Origin: Mytilus trossulus | Lineage: Eukaryota | Assembly: GCF_036588685.1 (NCBI RefSeq) | Contig: NC_086375.1 | Span: forward strand, 17,422,001-17,486,000 | Length of the DNA: 64,000 nucleotides | Direction of reading: 5' to 3' | Shown: positions 24,276 to 31,610 of the stretch, piece by piece | Layout of the letters: every line of letters starts with the position of its first letter | Numbering within the stretch: the first letter of the stretch is position 1 | The notes under the pieces: generated by a model | Database searches by the model: none | What the model was told of the DNA's origin: nothing | What the model saw: the letters and a program-made list of their open reading frames with translations, nothing else | Position numbers and translations under genes: made by a program

Positions 24276-25548
24276 TGTTTATTTACGTTATAAAAACTAG
24301 TCTGTTCATTTGTTGAGCGTTGTGTACAATCTAATTAACATTAAATATCCGCACTCCCTTATTTTTTATGCTTGGTCGTTTTGGAGCTCAGGTGCATGTC
24401 TCGTGGTGTTTTTTTTTGTGCTCAAGTTTCTAATGTTAGCTGTCCATTACCAAATGTTACAGTAATGGCTTTATCGAAATATTACCTTCTTTTTTAATTC
24501 GTTAGTTATAAAAATGGAATTGCACCAAATCAAAAAATTATGACAGAGTTAATCTTCAACAATTTTGGCTTAAATGCTCTCAAACTTTTAATGATATCAA
24601 TGTGTCTCAAGCGTACACGATATTTGTTCCAAAATACACGAGTAGACTGAAGTTGATATAGTATGTTTATGTATATAAAGATAATCAGGTTTTGCTCTTC
24701 TGTCATAAACTATACATATAGTTGCGGCAATCCGCGTGATTTGAACTATTATAGTGAATAGTTGTCTAATTGGTAATCTTTCCATACCTATTTATTTACA
24801 TACAAGTAAATGAATTGTCATCTCATTCTGGGTTAAACTATAAACATTTTTTGTTACTGATATATATCTAATACACCCTCATTAATTACGCGCTGATGAT
24901 CATAACTGCATATTGTTCTTTTTTTCAGTATTTTAGTCATCTGTTAAATCGAAATTGAAGTAATTTGAAAAATTTCCGCATGTTTTAGAAATGACAACAT
25001 TCAATAACAACGTGTTTGTCTAATGAGGGATCTATAGCTAAAGGGAAACAACTGCGAATTGACAGATTGACCTGAGTTGTTAAAATTTCTAAAATGATAT
25101 TGAGGAGACCTTGTTGGTTAAAAAAAGTTACATGACACAATTGAATGACATAAATGCATATTTATTGTATTCAACGTTTAAGTTTTCATTGTGTATAATA
25201 CATAAAAAAAATCACTAGTACTTGTCTCGGAAAGCAGTTACCTATATTATACCTTGCTAAACCTATCGTTATATGTTTATGTAAATGGATAATTTTTCAG
25301 AGACAAGTGACTGTGATAAAAATCAGTAATCTTTTTGCCAAAATCGCAAAAATATCTATTGAAGACAAAAGATTAGAAATAGAAAACGCGTCTCCATGAT
25401 ATGCACTCAGTGGAGGTATATAATGGTAACATCGAATTATCGCTATTTTCTAAGAAATGGAATAGACGGTTGTCCGATTCTGCATGCTCAGTTAATCAGA
25501 GTTTTACAATGTCGGTTTTACGTAGATTTATTACTCTTCACATGTTCG

Positions 25549-25686
25549 TTAACTTTTGCCGCCTATACATTTTGCGCCTTCTGACAAAACAAAGTCATAA
25601 AGTAAACGAAAGTTTTCTTCTGTAGTTTCTGTATAACGGTCTCCTAAAATCTCTGATAATAACCCCATAAAGGTCGGATCCATTGC
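25549..25686 (-). CDS. Globin exon 3
   Basis: ttttcag acceptor; AMDPTF...CIGGKS-stop; candidate AATAAA (minus strand) at 25161-25166. Confidence 0.9.
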   Translation of the reverse strand, partial: AMDPTFMGLLSEILGDRYTETTEENFRLLYDFVLSEGAKCIGGKS

Positions 25687-28600
25687 CTGAAAAAGAACAA
25701 AAGGAGAATGAACGAATATTATTGAAGTGGCAAAACACAGTTTGGAGGGACACGAATAGTTAACGTGTAAGACAAGAAACATTTTGCATTTTATTTTCAA
25801 AACTATTGACATGAAATACATTTTTTTCAACAACAATATCCTTCCACTCTTCTGCTCAGTACTGTTATCTTTGTATTTTCATTTTAAAATAAATGTCCTT
25901 TCCAATGTTCTCCCAGCCTGTTTTTCTAAATAGAAATTGGATCTCAAACTTTACACAGTCGTTCTGAGATATTTGTTTTGATTAATCATATAACCATTGG
26001 TTTCTCACAAACTCGTGTCGTCTGGTACTGCTAAAGACTGTGCTGATACTTGAGCTTTGACGTCATTATGTTATATTAATAGATTTAAAAGTAGTTTGGG
26101 CTTGTTTTCTGTTGTTGCAATTATTGTTTTATATTATATTTTTCATTTCTGTTTCATTTGAACACGTTTTTCATTGTTGTTAGTTTAAGACTGTCGGTAA
26201 TACAGAGAAACTATTTTTTCTCATTTTTTTTTTTTTTTTAGTTCGTTCCTTTATGTTATGTTATGTTATGTAATGTTTTGTTATTCGATTTATTGAGATA
26301 AGGAAACGGGTTTAAGTTCTCATAGTTGGTCGGTGTACTATATGAGAAAAGAACATAAAAAATACATAATACTATGCATGTTTAGTATAATCCGGTTTAA
26401 GATTAAAGGAACACTAGCTGTCAAATTCATGTTCATCGATTTCACTCAAATTCTCATTTTTGAATTATAACCATGTAAAACATTTATCCAAATTACTAAA
26501 AAGTCTTAAATAAGCAATTAACCGGGCATGGGCTCGATAATATGCAGCTTCGTTTAGTGTGAATTATAGTCTTGTCGCCATCTAATTTACTACCAAGTTG
26601 ACCTCCGAAGACCTGCGATGGTCATGTAAGCGATATAAACATAAATATAGATAGGAATAGAAAACGAACTCGTGGAATTGTTTTTTTTCTAGATCTGTTT
26701 AATTTCATATTATGGAAATACGCGCAATGCATGCGTTATCAATTTCTAACAAAGGGGTTAAATGAAAGTTCACATGAATACGAATTCAATGAGGTGTTTC
26801 TTAGCTGAATTTGACAAAATTGAACAATACTGGCTGCCCAAAGGGATTATTAGTTCACTATTTCTCTTTCATAAATGTTTTTTTCGTAGCTAGTGGCCCG
26901 TCAACACTACACGCTCATGTGGGCATCTAATTCTACTTTAAATGATTTAAAACTATCAATTTTAATTAAAATTCAAGGTTACTTTTATTAAAAATTTGCT
27001 TTGCTGAAGTAAGGAAAATATAGGACAACATTCATGATAAGTACTATTTGAATGAAATTACAGGAAGGGTTTGATTTACATTTTAGTGGAATCTTGATTA
27101 AATCCGATAATTAAGATTTTCATTACGATTAAACCACGTATTTTTGAATTGCGTAATTTAGAATGATAAATTTCGATTTTAGACGGTCGCATTACATTCG
27201 TTTTAAGCTCGAGATCAGTCTCTTATACTGAACACTATTAGTATCAATTACGTTTTGTTTGACCCCTTTCTAATTTAAAACTTCAAAGTTTTCTTTTTTG
27301 TTGGTTTCAATTTTCTTTCTCGGTCCATATACACACGAGCTGGTAAATTATCCATTTTATCCTAAGGTACCAAAACACAGATATATAGAATGGCACAGAG
27401 ACGTGAACATGATGTTGGTTTAATATCTCATACTGTGGAATCTATATTTTCGTCGGTACCAATTTTCGTGAATTGCGGAAACATTGTATTTTCGTGGATA
27501 TTTGATTTCTTGGTTCTGCCAAATTCTGGATACAAATTTATAGAAATTTGTTTCCTTGAACATTTGAATTCGTTGTTAACCTGTAAACACGAAACGCACG
27601 AATATCGGTATCCAACGAATGATAATGATTCCACAGTATTTTAACTACCATACCTTCAGTATTTCTGATGTTTTCTCATTTGTCGAGAAGACATGATTGA
27701 TTTCTACCAATGCTTTATCGACTTCCTCTAAATTGTTTACAACATCGTCAAATAGTCCAAATATTTCTAATGCATCGTTTTCAAATTCGAAACTGTCCTT
27801 AATGTCTTCTTCACTTTTATTAGTATCGTATGATGGAAAATATTCTGCAAATTGATCATGTTTCTTCAAAAATCTGGAAAAAAGCAATATGCTACACTCA
27901 AACTATCTTATTATAATAATATTTTTGTTACCCTTCGACTCGTTCGGTAGAGTGGTATTGTGAACCAGTATTGTGTTCAAAGGGAAGTAATTTAATGTTG
28001 CAACTGAAAGTTTTCTTCGTCATTTACAGTTCCAGAGCTTTACTTTTTCACCCGTGGTTGAGCTCCATGGATTATTTTCACCTGTACATTTGCTTAACAT
28101 CGTAATATTTAAATTGCAAACCAAATCCCAAAACTTTTAATTAAAAGTAAACTTTTTAATAAGATCAGCTTATATATATATGCATTCAGGCATAATGATT
28201 GAAGAGGATTAACAAACGTCTATGTATGCGATACAAACATTACGTTTGATATCAAATCAAAATCTTTCGAAGATGATTTGATTTACTTTCGATCCATCTG
28301 AAGAAGTATAGACTTGTGTTTAGACCGCTCGAACAAACACATTAGATTTAAAAAAAAAACAAATTAAGAACAGATTGTTGAATAATAAACAAATGCCACA
28401 TTAACAGTTTGAAAATACAGCAATTATTTCGAGTAACTAGTGGTTGAGAATAAAAGATTGCTTGTTTCTACTAAGTTGCATACCATATCATGTAATGATA
28501 ATCACATCCAATATAAGTTGATGAATACAAGTCATTATGCTAGATTGTATATCTATCATTCGTGTAAGGCGTAACTAAACAAAGCCTCTACTTGTATTTG

Positions 28601-29151
28601 TTGTTGGATCAATATTCGTTCATAAAAATACAATTTTATTGCCTCATAAAACAATAAAAGATCTTTGAAACGTGAAATATCAAATTGTCAATCGTAACAA
28701 TATGAAAATATTCATATCATATCAAAATAATAACCGAAATATTGGACCTGCCACTTCCTTGCAATTAGGAATCTGACCGTTCATAGATAGTTACATTCAT
28801 TGATATTTTTGTAAGTATAAAAGAAATACATATCAATATCCTGCAGTATACCATTTTCAGATCAAAGCATTACAGAGATTTATGAATTTAAAACTGCTAT
28901 CATCAGTTCTAATGAAAATAACTGTGGTTGCAACGTTACCTCATTAGGTTTTCCTTTGCAGTTTCCTCCATGGAACGGGTCACCGCTTTCCATGCATTTC
29001 TCAAACTGAATATCTGCCTATATGTCTGGAATGGCAGCCTCGGATCAACAGTTTTCTTAGCTGAGCTGGATTCGGGTAAATGAATCTTTGTTTTCGCCTT
29101 TTGGCTAGATTTAGATTTAGATCCTTTGAATTTCGATTTTAATGCACCCAT
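25549..29151 (-). CDS. Globin (neuroglobin-like/membrane-type), 189 aa, exons 29151-28940, 27873-27654, 25686-25549
   Basis: Exons of 212+220+138 nt splice in frame with canonical globin intron positions B12.2 and G7.0. A-helix W (RNAWKAV), CD1 Phe (AEYFP), E/F helix FDDVVNNLEEVD, G/H helices LGDRYTETTEENFRLLYDFV. Confidence 0.9.
26403..26902. mobile_element. Probable Kolobok-type element in globin intron 2
   Basis: TTAAAGGAACACTAGCT ... AGCTAGTGGCCC imperfect terminal inverted repeat. Confidence 0.45.
27654..27873 (-). CDS. Globin exon 2
   Basis: ttttccag acceptor, AAG|gtatgg donor, phase 2 to 0. Confidence 0.9.
28940..29151 (-). CDS. Globin exon 1
   Basis: MGALKSKFKG...ENLM(R); AG|gtaacg donor, phase 2. 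Confidence 0.9.
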
Positions 29152-31610
29152 TTTGTAGTTTTAAACACACACATAAACAAATAAACACATGAATAAATAA
29201 ATAAACAAATCAAAACATTTCAAAATAAATATCACAATATTCGGATATACATATCCGACCTTATAAATAGAGATATGATATAGATATGTAATTAAATGTC
29301 AGGTACTATATACAAGTCTACACTCGATCTACTACCGTGCCAAGTTTTTTTCTTTATGGATTAAGATTTGCATTCATCTGACGTACTTCTGCAAACAAAA
29401 CCCCTTGTATGTACTCTTGTGTGAATGAACTACTTCAATATTTAGATTATTTCACTTCGACAAACATGTATAATATTGGTAGGTGATAAAATTCGACAGT
29501 GTTTTTATTCACCTCGAATTCAATCACTTTTTCAAAGTTTTGTATTAAGTATTTTAATATCGGAAAGTAGTTATATTGGATTAACTTTTTAAGCAAACAG
29601 TCTAGTATATTACATATAATTTGATATTAATGAAAGTGGATTTCTCTCTATTTGCTAATGAGTCATAATGATTTTAATACTGTTACTTTTTCAAATGTTT
29701 TTGGTTTGTATGAGAAATATATACAAATGACTTTGACCTGATCGGTCAAGATTAAAACAGCTACGTATATAGCTTTGTAGCAAGTGAAGCTTTGGAAATT
29801 TGCAGTATTTATTTGAAATCAAAACTTATAGTCCTAACAATTAAGACATGACAAATCCTTGTTTTCCGTAGTATAAACAAATATGACAGTTTTGACGGTT
29901 AAGTAATTAGGAATTTTGACTGCTTTAATTATAGCTTCTCGAAAAATCCTTTTAAGTGAACTCAAATTAGTTGCTGGTAAAATGATGCTGCGTTACTTAT
30001 AGTTGTTATATATATTGGAGAAATGATTATGCTTTTTCAATTACTTGTTCTATAATTTTATTTTCATTTTATTTTGAGACTGTGGTTTCATCTCAGTAAT
30101 TTCAACACCTGGAGGAATTTGTTTGTCTATTCTATCTTAATTTTGAAATTAACTACAGGTATCTGTATCTGTTTACGGTGTCTGTATTTAAAAAGAGTTA
30201 TGAATATGAAAATAATATTATTTCATTTGTGTGTGTGCAGAAATTAGTTATTTGCTATGCATAAAAAGTGTCTACGCATTCAGATTAGCTGTGTAAAATT
30301 CTAAACACTGAATTACAAATGAGAAAATAATAAAACAAAAACAAAAACAGAACCCCGTTTGATTACACAAACTAAGCATAAAACCAATCCATTCAAAGTA
30401 AGATTATGACTTATATGTCAGCGTTATCTGCAGGAGTTCGAAGTTAAATGATTGAGATGCCTTACTTATTCTTTATTATGTAGATCTATGATGAAATAAG
30501 TTTTTATATGTAATACATATGCTTTTGTTTAGTTCTAGATATCATATGATGGAGAACATAATTCTGCAAAACTTTGACAAAATTCGATTCTCATGATGTG
30601 TACCAATAAAACTAAATAGCAACGAAGAAGAGGAGAGACTAGAACGTAGATCATCATGTGTATTCTGGCTGCACATAATGTACATTGTTTCAATCATTTG
30701 CAAAACAAATCAAAACAATTATGCTTTAATATATCGAACATAAAATTAAATGACATAAACAAAACATGAATTCATTTCATTCATAGTACGGTCTTTTTTG
30801 AAGATGAAAAATAAGTCATAATTAATTCGGGCAAAGTATACGTAATTGTGAGGTATTTGGAGGTATTTCGGATTTTCACAAAAATTTGTAAGCATTTAAA
30901 ACTCGTCAAAATCGCCTGATTAACGTCAAAAGGATAAATATAGCATTTGTATTTCAAAATATAACATTTCTAAACAAGACCATAATGTAATTGCGATGAC
31001 TATTTTCATCCTAATGTTATATTCAATTTATATGAGAACAAAGGTTCTCCTTTTCTCCAAGGAAATCCATTATTCTCGGTATGTAGAGTGAAAAAACACA
31101 GAAAGGACAAAATAAGTGAAACGTAAAGACATCGTCTAGCTGCAAAATCGCAGTGTTTCATGTTAATTTTGACATACACTTTGATACTCGATGTTTTCGC
31201 AGAAAAAAAGTACCATTTTTGAATATTTTGTTTACTGAATTTATAGAAATAGTCAGTTATTGAATGTGAAAATAAATTTACTTGCCGCTTTAACGAACCT
31301 TCTAAACATATTCAGGTCAGTGTTTTCCCTATATTTTTAACTGATTAAATATTTGGAAATTTCAACGCTACATGTATCCTTCGATTGTCAGAAGTAGTTC
31401 AATGAAGTCTAATTTTCAAAAAAGGAAATATAAAGAAAATTACCGACTATTGCGTAAGATTGAGTTTTACCAAAACAAAATTCCCAAACCTTATTACCGT
31501 TAAACATACAAGTGGAAAACCAACATATGGTCAAATTTTGTCAGCTCTGTACATTTGATTCGATAAGACATCACAAACGGTATCTGTGTTAACCAGTCCG
31601 GCCAGACACA

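What the first reader, a model, noticed from the sequence alone, without database searches (positions are those of the whole stretch)
27654..27873. Globin apparently lacking canonical heme-ligand histidines
Seen: the E helix reads FENDALEIF, placing Asp104 (GAT) where related globins have His E7. Counting 32 residues on, as in neuroglobin E7 to F8, lands on Asn136 (AAT) in VFSTN. The only nearby His (131) is five residues early, and the F-G segment is about four residues short. C2 Pro is also replaced (HDQF), while CD1 Phe, the A-helix Trp and both canonical introns are retained. Both codons are one change from CAT. Established: His F8 is near-invariant in heme-binding globins. Inference: either a heme-free pseudo-globin or a globin with shifted proximal ligand and an acidic distal pocket.
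Basis: partly seen in the sequence, partly recalled or inferred. Interest (0 to 1): 0.8.

Follow-up and report, generated by a model that had tools for sequence, protein, structure and literature searches.

The report
Bivalve membrane globin without heme histidines
This mussel gene makes a lipid-anchored protein that keeps the globin shape but has lost both histidines that normally hold and gate the heme iron; the same loss is seen in the matching gene of every bivalve found, so it is an old, conserved globin that probably works without ordinary heme chemistry.

Summary
Window 27654-27873 (minus strand) is exon 2 of a three-exon gene for a 189-aa protein. Spliced transcript contigs from four studies confirm both introns and the three codons. 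The exon translations match a Mytilus trossulus record letter for letter (XP_063426638.1, "hemoglobin subunit alpha-D-like"). The protein is a real globin: Pfam 24.2 bits and a confident AlphaFold model. Its best structural match is the tardigrade hexacoordinate globin 5ziq/5zm9. Alignments to that structure, to cytoglobin and to a chiton orthologue put Asp104 at E7 and Asn136 at F8. They also show a 4-residue FG deletion. His131 lies at F3.

The new point is that this is not a Mytilus quirk. Single-copy orthologues in mussels, pearl oyster, scallops, oysters, unionids and heterodont clams all lack a conserved His at E7, F8 or anywhere in the F helix. The myristoylation and polybasic N-terminus and the pre-A/A segment are almost invariant. 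The chiton orthologue keeps Gln E7 and His F8. The mussel genome also holds canonical MGC-acylated paralogues with both His.

Best reading: an ancient, constrained, membrane-anchored globin X-type protein that no longer ligates heme through His and is probably heme-free. I found no paper describing this.

The parts
28940..29151 (-). Exon 1 coding part: Met1 to the first two bases of the Arg71 codon. It covers the N-terminal anchor, the pre-A segment, the A helix and the B helix up to B12.
   Evidence: ORF and translation. Donor GT and split codon AG|A. Joint 27873>28940 in transcript contigs of four runs.
29080..29151 (-). Residues 1-24, MGALKSKFKGSKSKSSQKAKTKIH: N-myristoylation motif plus polybasic stretch (8 Lys, no acidic residue).
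   Evidence: The motif G-{EDRKHPFYW}-x(2)-[STAGCN]-{P} is met, and the charge count was made. MG[ATNG][LI]KS[KR] occurs in all 30 full-length bivalve sequences and MGNAKSK in the chiton. Modification itself is not shown.
29152..29300 (-). 5' UTR, at least this far.
   Evidence: Transcript contigs run on to 29247-29300, the end of the stretch laid (table 8).
27874..28939 (-). Intron 1 (position B12.2), GT..AG.
27654..27873 (-). Exon 2 (the finding): last base of the Arg71 codon plus residues 72-144. It runs from B13 through the C, D, E and F helices to G6.
   Evidence: Pfam Globin match on residues 1-54 of the exon, 21.1 bits.
27774..27776 (-). Asp104 codon GAT, position E7.
   Evidence: It aligns to Gln of the chiton orthologue, which aligns to E7 of the cytoglobin H(E7)Q chain 4b3w.
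27693..27695 (-). His131 codon CAT, position F3. It is conserved in the five Mytilus species (His also in four oyster rows) but not across bivalves.
27678..27680 (-). Asn136 codon AAT, position F8, where relatives carry the proximal His.
   Evidence: It aligns to the F8 His of 5ziq (profile) and of the chiton P0059 (BLASTP). The chiton His in turn aligns to the F8 His of 5ziq and of cytoglobin.
27855..27857 (-). Asp77 codon GAT, position C2. This is Pro in nearly all other members.
25687..27653 (-). Intron 2 (position G7.0), GT..AG. It holds dispersed repeats with very high transcript-contig depth.
25549..25686 (-). Exon 3 coding part: residues 145-189 (G7 to the C-terminus) plus the TAA stop.
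25300..25548 (-). 3' UTR, at least this far, with an allelic replaced segment at 25380-25464.
   Evidence: Transcript contigs (tables 5 and 8).

Best explanation
The finding is exon 2 of an expressed, correctly spliced, single-copy mussel gene for a 189-residue protein of the N-acylated membrane-globin kind (globin X / globin X-like; the closest solved structure is the tardigrade hexacoordinate globin). Three things are shown. The full 3-on-3 globin fold is kept. A myristoylation motif with a polybasic stretch sits at the N-terminus. Asp stands at E7 and Asn at F8, with a 4-residue deletion in the FG corner that removes the FG5 heme contact. It is also shown that the orthologous gene in all sampled bivalve lineages lacks any conserved His at E7, at F8 or elsewhere in the F helix. 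The chiton orthologue and canonical paralogues in the same mussel genome keep these residues. From this I infer three things. The axial His-Fe ligation was lost on the bivalve stem. The protein has been kept by selection since then for a job that does not need it. It therefore does not carry out reversible O2 binding or bis-His redox chemistry. The most likely working model is a heme-free globin module tethered to the inner face of a membrane by myristate plus lysines. It would act through its nearly invariant pre-A/A-helix surface as a partner-binding or regulatory adaptor. It may use the still-hydrophobic pocket for a non-heme hydrophobic ligand such as a lipid.
For: Gene model and expression: joints 27873>28940 and 25685>27653 occur in transcript contigs of four runs from four studies, and transcript variants split 6 synonymous to 1 non-synonymous. 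The exon translations are exact substrings of the database protein P0024. Globin identity: Pfam 24.2 bits against a cut-off of 22. The family profile hits 5ziq at E = 2.7e-18. The AlphaFold model has pLDDT 85.3 and eight helices. Foldseek's best hits are 5zm9/5ziq at TM 0.73/0.88, followed by neuroglobin and cytoglobin. Residue mapping: the F8 His of 5ziq, of the chiton and of cytoglobin all align to N136, and E7 aligns to D104, with a 4-residue FG gap. Family: 30 full-length bivalve sequences were compared, from Mytilus x5, Pinctada, 4 scallops, 4 oysters, 2 unionids, Mercenaria, Mya and transcript-derived ones. E7 is D/H/R/Y/T/A/K/M/L/V and F8 is N/H/S/G/gap/A/T/F. Thirteen of the 30 have no His at all between F1 and G12. 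Entropy at E7, F8, F4 and CD3 is 2.6-2.95 against a core median of 1.3, while pre-A plus A helix is 0.52. The gene tree follows bivalve groups with one copy per named species. Canonical paralogues with MGC N-termini, E7 His and F8 His lie at G000:C3:57.7-57.85 Mb.
Against: No experiment bears on heme content. The hydrophobic pocket positions (B10, B14, CD1, CD4, E11, E15, F1, G4, G5, G8, G12) stay hydrophobic. That would also fit a pocket that is still occupied, possibly by heme held without a His or by another ligand. Most pteriomorph members carry a His at position 130 or 131, so a lineage-restricted shifted ligand is not excluded. I could not read model coordinates, so the side-chain orientation of His131 rests on helical periodicity alone. 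The adaptor or lipid-binding function is inference without direct support. Orthology of the chiton protein rests on best-hit ranking and shared N-terminal architecture, not on a tree with reference paralogues.
Confidence: 0.6

Rival explanations
1. The protein is still a heme protein with non-canonical ligation. In Mytilus and other pteriomorphs, His131 or His130 on a re-registered F helix would serve as proximal ligand. In other lineages heme would be held by Tyr or another residue, or only by hydrophobic contacts. Asp104 would then make an unusually acidic distal pocket.
For: His is present at 131 in the five Mytilus species and four oyster sequences, and at 130 in Pinctada and five scallop sequences. 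Tyr stands at column 131 in six heterodont-type rows (five full-length), including Mercenaria and Mya. Pocket-lining hydrophobic residues are conserved. The FG deletion could shift the F-helix register. From general knowledge, heme can stay in myoglobin without the proximal His.
Against: No candidate ligand is conserved across the family. Column 131 reads H/R/Q/D/S/Y/F/I/V/T and column 130 reads N/S/R/H/E/A/Q/K. The closest non-Mytilus mytilid-like sequences have Arg or Gln at 131. Thirteen of 30 sequences have no His anywhere from F1 to G12. The conserved hydrophobic stripe 122/125/126/129 continues with helical periodicity to 132/133/136 (these last columns are themselves variable), which puts 136 and not 131 on the pocket face (inference). 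F4, F7, F8 and the FG corner are the most variable part of the protein.
Confidence: 0.27
2. It is a decaying gene or neutral relic: a pseudogene in the making whose ligand loss is recent and unconstrained.
For: The Pfam score is only just above the cut-off (24.2 against 22), and the Mercenaria orthologue does not reach Pfam Globin at all. The C2 Pro is lost in Mytilus only.
Against: The reading frame is open, both introns are canonical and spliced transcripts occur in four studies. Transcript variants split 6 synonymous to 1 non-synonymous. Identity is 93-97% among five Mytilus species and 45-53% across Bivalvia, with invariant motifs. The gene tree matches taxonomy with one copy per species.
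Confidence: 0.03
3. It is an artefact: an assembly or sequencing error, or a wrong exon model, produces the missing histidines.
For: None found.
Against: Independent transcript contigs reproduce the exon 2 letters. Five species' annotated proteins agree. No second copy of exon 2 exists in the genome.
Confidence: 0.01

Closest known systems
Kumaglobin, the hexacoordinate heme protein of the tardigrade Ramazzottius varieornatus (PDB 5ziq/5zm9; the name comes from my own knowledge and from reference lists in PMC12403961 and PMC7380671)
   Same: It is the best sequence match in the PDB (E = 2.7e-18) and the best structural match (TM 0.73/0.88, rmsd about 2 A). It shares the pre-A motif DPR(L/F)P, the E/EF pattern with ..VD..L.., and the G-helix register.
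   Different: The tardigrade protein has the F8 His (GRQH) and the full FG corner (KTVPGF), and it binds heme. The mussel protein has Asn at that column and lacks four FG residues. The 171-residue chain on record aligns only from its residue 18, and no N-terminal acylation motif was seen in that part.
Globin X and globin X-like (GbX/GbXL), the N-acylated membrane-bound metazoan globins (PMC3176823, PMC7457136, PMC7771090)
   Same: They share the N-terminal myristoylation motif on an N-terminal extension, a single globin domain and introns at B12.2 and G7.0. The three-exon structure without an E10.2 intron is the one PMC7457136 describes for GbXL. Paralogues in the same genome with MGC N-termini share the VDPRLP pre-A motif and the same exon 1 end.
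   Different: [quoted passage not shown] Here E7 and F8 are lost across a whole class. The anchor is myristate plus lysines rather than myristate plus Cys3 palmitate. Placement in the GbX or GbXL clade was not tested by a tree with reference sequences.
Chiton orthologue XP_064599596.1, 'cytoglobin-2-like' of Liolophura sinensis (P0059)
   Same: It is 42% identical over 182 residues. It has the same MG..KSK start, the same PESS.A.KTVDPRLPF..YRQ.F.LRN.WK segment and the same length class. Its best matches in the mussel genome are this gene's exons.
   Different: It has Gln at E7, His at F8 and four more FG residues. Its Pfam score is 52 bits against 24 bits.
Other animal globin domains that lack the ligands: hexapod androglobin, some Daphnia HbL, Puriana HbL2 (PMC7457136). 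Also the bacterial non-heme globin sensor domain of Bacillus (cited there)
   Same: These show the globin fold surviving without E7 and/or F8 His, which suggests a non-respiratory function.
   Different: Androglobin is a large chimeric protein with a degenerate embedded domain. The crustacean cases are single, lineage-specific paralogues. Here a small single-domain, lipid-anchored globin is conserved without ligands across an entire molluscan class. Kinship with the bacterial domain goes no further than the shared fold.

Membership tests
Globin superfamily (Pfam PF00042, 3-on-3 fold) | Sequence profile score at or above the curated cut-off | tested here: met
   The whole protein P0024 scores 24.2 bits against a cut-off of 22. 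Exon 2 alone scores 21.1 bits. The family profile hits PDB globins down to E = 2.7e-18.
Globin superfamily (Pfam PF00042, 3-on-3 fold) | Eight-helix A-H globin fold | tested here: met
   The AlphaFold model has pLDDT 85.3 and helices A to H. Foldseek's listed hits are almost all globins, with probability 1.00.
Globin superfamily (Pfam PF00042, 3-on-3 fold) | Proximal His at F8 | tested here: not met
   Asn136 aligns to the F8 His of 5ziq, of the chiton protein and of cytoglobin. No His is conserved at this column in bivalves.
Globin superfamily (Pfam PF00042, 3-on-3 fold) | Distal His or Gln at E7 | tested here: not met
   Asp104 stands here. The column reads D/H/R/Y/T/A/K/M/L/V across bivalves.
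Globin superfamily (Pfam PF00042, 3-on-3 fold) | Phe at CD1 | tested here: met
   Phe83 in Mytilus. The column is F or Y in 28 of 30 bivalve sequences and Leu in 2.
Globin superfamily (Pfam PF00042, 3-on-3 fold) | Heme binding | not testable with these tools
   This needs spectroscopy of the protein. No cofactor-aware model or coordinates were available.
Globin X / globin X-like (N-acylated membrane globins) | N-terminal myristoylation motif (Gly2) | tested here: met
   MGALKSK fits G-{EDRKHPFYW}-x(2)-[STAGCN]-{P} and is conserved in all full-length members. Modification itself is not shown.
Globin X / globin X-like (N-acylated membrane globins) | Cys3 palmitoylation site | tested here: not met
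   Residue 3 is Ala, with a polybasic stretch of 8 Lys in residues 1-24 instead. The canonical paralogues in the genome start MGC.
Globin X / globin X-like (N-acylated membrane globins) | Introns at B12.2 and G7.0 (GbXL), plus E10.2 in GbX | tested here: met
   B12.2 and G7.0 are present and there is no E-helix intron, which is the GbXL pattern described in PMC7457136. The E10.2 intron typical of GbX is absent.
Globin X / globin X-like (N-acylated membrane globins) | Placement inside the GbX or GbXL clade in a tree with reference sequences | not tested
Only PDB and own-genome relatives were compared.
Globin X / globin X-like (N-acylated membrane globins) | Bis-His hexacoordinate heme | tested here: not met
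   Both ligand residues are absent. The chemistry itself cannot be tested here.
Androglobin | Large chimeric protein with calpain-like domain, split globin domain and IQ motif | tested here: not met
   This is a 189-residue single-domain protein with Pfam Globin as the only hit.

The most novel reading that the evidence does not exclude
Bivalves have kept, since their common ancestor, a lipid-anchored single-domain globin that works with no heme at all. It would be a conserved animal 'apoglobin' that uses the globin fold as a membrane-tethered adaptor or as a sensor of a non-heme hydrophobic ligand. It arose from a heme-binding globin X-type ancestor that chitons still have. Its nearly invariant N-terminal segment would point to the long-sought protein partner or function of membrane globins, independent of gas or redox chemistry.
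Probability: 0.45. Interest if true: 0.78.

Novelty: new variant of a known kind. Interest (0 to 1): 0.6.

Why it matters
The function of membrane-bound globins (globin X and globin X-like) is an open question. Proposals such as lipid protection, redox sensing and nitrite reduction all rest on heme chemistry. Here a whole animal class has kept the anchor and the N-terminal segment of such a globin almost unchanged while discarding the iron ligands. That suggests part of the family's function lies in membrane location and protein contacts, not in heme. It also offers a natural separation-of-function set. Three forms can be compared directly: the chiton orthologue with His, the bivalve orthologues without, and canonical paralogues in the same mussel genome. 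On the practical side, public annotations such as 'hemoglobin subunit alpha-D-like' and 'NGB' are misleading for this gene.

Tried and rejected
1. I first tried placing His131 at F8 by ungapped comparison with vertebrate globin spacing recalled from memory (29 residues from E7 to F8). I rejected this after the profile, BLASTP and phmmer alignments all placed F8 at Asn136.
2. I considered that 'MDPTF' at the start of exon 3 might be the FG 'VDPENF' motif, which would have moved the intron. I rejected this: the chiton and cytoglobin alignments put these residues at G8-G12 and the intron at G7.0.
3. A search of the own genome with exon 2 found no paralogue. Canonical paralogues appeared only when the chiton protein was used as query.
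4. The word search with the chiton protein returned nothing. Its cluster representative is an 87-aa fragment, so no gastropod, cephalopod or annelid relatives were obtained and the date of the loss is bracketed only by chiton against bivalves.
I therefore could not fetch orthologous coding DNA, and no dN/dS between species was computed.
6. Rfam found nothing in the window.
7. The Kumaglobin paper (PubMed 30506636) is not held.
8. Literature searches for orthologue accessions, and for His-less GbX or GbXL in molluscs, found nothing.
9. The ESM Atlas gave only generic globin clusters.
10. A look for the alternative first exon of the M. galloprovincialis isoforms in this window found no match.
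11. Exons were never joined by me.
Full report
**Observation**

The stretch 27654-27873 is read on the minus strand. Its 73 full codons give FLKKHDQFAEYFPSYDTNKSEEDIKDSFEFENDALEIFGLFDDVVNNLEEVDKALVEINHVFSTNEKTSEILK. In the numbering of the whole protein:
- Asp104 is GAT at 27774-27776.
- His131 is CAT at 27693-27695.
- Asn136 is AAT at 27678-27680.
- Asp77 is GAT at 27855-27857.
- Phe83 is TTT at 27837-27839.

**Gene model and expression**

The gene has three exons on the minus strand:
- Exon 1 spans 29151-28940 and opens MGALKSKFKG....
- Exon 2 spans 27873-27654.
- Exon 3 spans 25686-25549 and reads AMDPTF...GGKS, then stop.

Both introns are GT..AG, and the first splits the Arg71 codon as AG|A. 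I laid contigs of four public runs on 25300-29300. They come from four studies under two organism labels. All four contain records that jump exactly 27873>28940 and 25685>27653 and continue into both UTRs. The genome holds only one copy of exon 2, so these are spliced transcripts and not a retrocopy.

Within the coding exons the contigs differ from the window at seven places. Six are synonymous third-position changes and one is S179A. Exon 2 carries only E120 GAG>GAA. The missing histidines are therefore not sequencing errors, and the gene is transcribed and constrained.

**Whole protein**

The big search with exon 2 gave 13 hits, including a full-length relative. A word search with that relative returned P0024. 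This is XP_063426638.1, Mytilus trossulus, 189 aa, named 'hemoglobin subunit alpha-D-like'. The three exon translations are exact substrings of P0024 at residues 1-70, 72-144 and 145-189, and residue 71 is the split Arg. All whole-protein work used this database record. Its 90% cluster holds orthologues from M. coruscus, M. galloprovincialis, M. edulis (named 'NGB') and M. californianus. These are 93-97% identical and all keep D104, H131 and N136.

**It is a globin**

- Exon 2 alone scores 21.1 bits on Pfam Globin, just under the cut-off. The whole protein scores 24.2 bits against a cut-off of 22.
- A profile of 16 family members finds PDB 5ziq/5zm9 at E = 2.7e-18. Lamprey and sea-cucumber hemoglobins, cytoglobin and myoglobins follow.
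- AlphaFold2 on that alignment gives pLDDT 85.3 and pTM 0.76. The helices are A 44-58, B 61-75, C 77-82, D 92-96, E 99-117, F 122-135, G 139-161 and H 164-186.
- Foldseek ranks 5zm9/5ziq first ('hexacoordinated heme protein from anhydrobiotic tardigrade', TM 0.73/0.88, rmsd 1.7-2.0 A). Neuroglobin and cytoglobin come next.

**Which residue is F8**

Three independent alignments agree.
- The family profile aligned to 5ziq puts that protein's GRQH histidine on the column of Asn136, with extra residues in the tardigrade FG corner.
- BLASTP of P0024 against the chiton protein P0059 aligns STNEKT----SE with QAHSTVPGFEPQ. This is Asn136 on His, with a clean 4-residue gap.
- The chiton His aligns without gaps to the F8 His of 5ziq and of cytoglobin. 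The chiton Gln in FENQAV aligns to E7 of the cytoglobin H(E7)Q chain.

This gives the following map: C2 = 77, CD1 = 83, E7 = 104, E11 = 108, F1 = 129, F4 = 132, F8 = 136, G5 = 143, G7 = 145, G8 = 146 and G12 = 150. The first intron is at B12.2 and the second at G7.0. By myoglobin numbering (my own knowledge), the deletion removes FG5, which is a heme contact. His131 is F3. The conserved hydrophobic stripe runs 122/125/126/129 and, by helical periodicity, on to 132/133/136, though those last three columns are themselves variable. That puts 136 and not 131 on the pocket face. This last point is inference, because I could not read coordinates.

**The family**

Two word searches and the cluster look-up gave full-length members from these groups:
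- Mytilus, five species.
- Three transcript-derived mytilid-like sequences.
- Pinctada.
- Scallops: Mizuhopecten, Ylistrum, Pecten and Argopecten.
- Oysters: Crassostrea (two records, covering three species), Saccostrea and Ostrea.
- Unionids: Potamilus and Sinanodonta.
- Mercenaria and Mya, plus transcript-derived heterodont-like sequences.

All named members are bivalves. In 30 full-length sequences:
- The E7 column reads D/H/R/Y/T/A/K/M/L/V.
- The F8 column reads N/H/S/G/gap/A/T/F, with a single His in one mytilid-like sequence.
- Column 131 reads H/R/Q/D/S/Y/F/I/V/T.
- Thirteen sequences have no His anywhere from F1 to G12.

Over 16 lineage representatives, the entropy is 2.95 at E7, 2.66 at F8, 2.6 at F4 and 2.88 at CD3. 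The core median is 1.3. The pre-A segment and the A helix (LPESSSA.KTVDPRLPF..YRQIFS.RNAWK) average 0.52, which makes them the most conserved part. Pocket-lining hydrophobic positions B10, B14, CD1, CD4, E11, E15, F1, G4, G5, G8 and G12 stay hydrophobic.

A maximum-likelihood tree recovers scallops, oysters, mytilids and unionids plus heterodonts, with one copy per named species. The chiton sits on a long branch. This is a single-copy orthologous group inherited since the bivalve ancestor.

**Relatives with histidines**

The chiton Liolophura protein P0059 ('cytoglobin-2-like', 195 aa) shares the MG..KSK start and the whole pre-A/A segment, and is 42% identical. It has Gln E7, His F8 and the full FG corner, and scores 52 bits on Pfam. 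When it is searched against the mussel genome, its best matches are the three exons of this gene.

Weaker matches fall in a cluster on the same chromosome, at G000:C3:57.70-57.85 Mb.
- The exon 2-type frames there read ...LEQHATAV...NGRRHSSYEGF... and ...LEKHATFV...TGNSHQRF..., so E7 His and F8 His are both present.
- The first exons there start MGCRQTK, MGCSQSK and MGCQYSQ and contain (V)DPRLPL...RQVFKLK.SWKGI. They end at the same B12 position.

The genome thus holds canonical, dually acylated globin X-type paralogues beside this His-less gene. It has at least 22 Pfam-level globin exon matches in all, and this exon is not among them.

**How it most likely works**

*Shown:* the fold, the anchor motif, the absence of conserved iron ligands, the FG deletion, expression, and long-term constraint concentrated on the N-terminal segment.

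*Inferred:* the proximal half of the heme site (F4, F7, F8, FG) was released from selection on the bivalve stem, so His-Fe ligation was lost. The protein is tethered to a membrane by myristate plus eight lysines. It acts through the conserved pre-A/A surface, and perhaps through a still-hydrophobic pocket that may hold a non-heme ligand.

My odds are:
- About 0.6 that it does not bind heme in a His-ligated way and is functionally heme-free.
- About 0.27 for non-canonical heme binding. This rival is kept alive by the His at 130/131 in most pteriomorphs and by the conserved pocket hydrophobics.
- A few per cent for decay or artefact.

The many serines inside the polybasic stretch would suit a myristoyl-electrostatic switch. 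That is speculation.

**Comparison with what is known**

[quoted passage not shown] It also states that GbXL genes have the three-exon B12.2/G7.0 structure, while GbX adds an E10.2 intron. This gene has the GbXL-type structure.
- The same paper lists ligand-less globin domains: hexapod androglobin, some Daphnia HbL and Puriana HbL2. It also cites a bacterial non-heme globin.
- PMC8136487 reports GbX in all ten molluscs surveyed, but its text holds none of the words histidine, heme-binding or myristoyl, so ligand loss is not discussed.
- PMC7771090 notes that acylated clades may combine myristoylation with a basic motif.

I found no paper describing this His-less bivalve group. Clade membership in GbX or GbXL was not tested with reference sequences.

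**Limits**

- The third word search returned nothing, so gastropods, cephalopods and annelids were not sampled.
- Model coordinates are not readable.
- Run identities are coded, so no tissue information was obtained.

Noticed in passing
window 26372-26505, 26640-26907 and 27444-27640: Stretches of intron 2 collect very many short transcript contigs at 90-95% identity, with summed depth in the hundreds to thousands. They have loose ends, and the last one stops about 13 nt from the exon 2 donor site. They look like dispersed, transcribed repeats. Rfam finds no family anywhere in the window at gathering scores.
   Followed up: partly
window 25380-25464 (3' UTR): In all four runs, one transcript contig replaces these 85 bases by 84 other letters. 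In three of the runs other contigs follow the window. Small indels occur at 25505-25513. This is probably a divergent 3' UTR allele or haplotype.
   Followed up: no
G000:C3:57.70-57.85 Mb (loci L004, L005, L006, L008, L009): A cluster of at least four or five canonical globin X-type genes. Their first exons start MGC (myristoyl plus palmitoyl motif) and their exon 2 carries E7 His and F8 His. They lie on the same chromosome, about 40 Mb from this gene.
   Followed up: partly
G000:C12:43.52-43.59 Mb, plus C1, C2, C3, C10 and C42: At least 22 Pfam-level globin exon matches exist in the genome, including a tandem group on C12. Five matches contain in-frame TAA stops (for example C12:43524842 and C1:67178700), which may be introns or broken copies.
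   Followed up: no
proteins P0009, P0014-P0019 and P0010 (heterodont-type orthologues): The heterodont members carry an acidic C-terminal extension of variable length. It ends in a conserved motif (E/Q)V(E/Q)V(N/D)(L/I)C followed by 4-6 residues. Mussels, oysters, scallops and unionids lack it.
   Followed up: no
proteins P0043 and P0045 (M. galloprovincialis isoforms X3 and X2): These annotated isoforms replace residues 1-15 (MGALKSKFKGSKSKS) by MFR or MFRYRLTEI. They would lack the myristoylation site. No matching upstream exon was found in this window by a simple peptide search.
   Followed up: partly
protein P0007: A 1983-residue protein of unknown source with 12 Pfam globin domains (530 bits) was among the weak hits to exon 2. 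It is a giant multi-domain globin.
   Followed up: no
PDB 5ziq alignment: In the tardigrade hexacoordinate globin, the column aligned to E7 is Ala and a His stands four residues later, in the E11 column. E7 may therefore already be variable in this clade among heme-binding members. The paper was not available to check.
   Followed up: no
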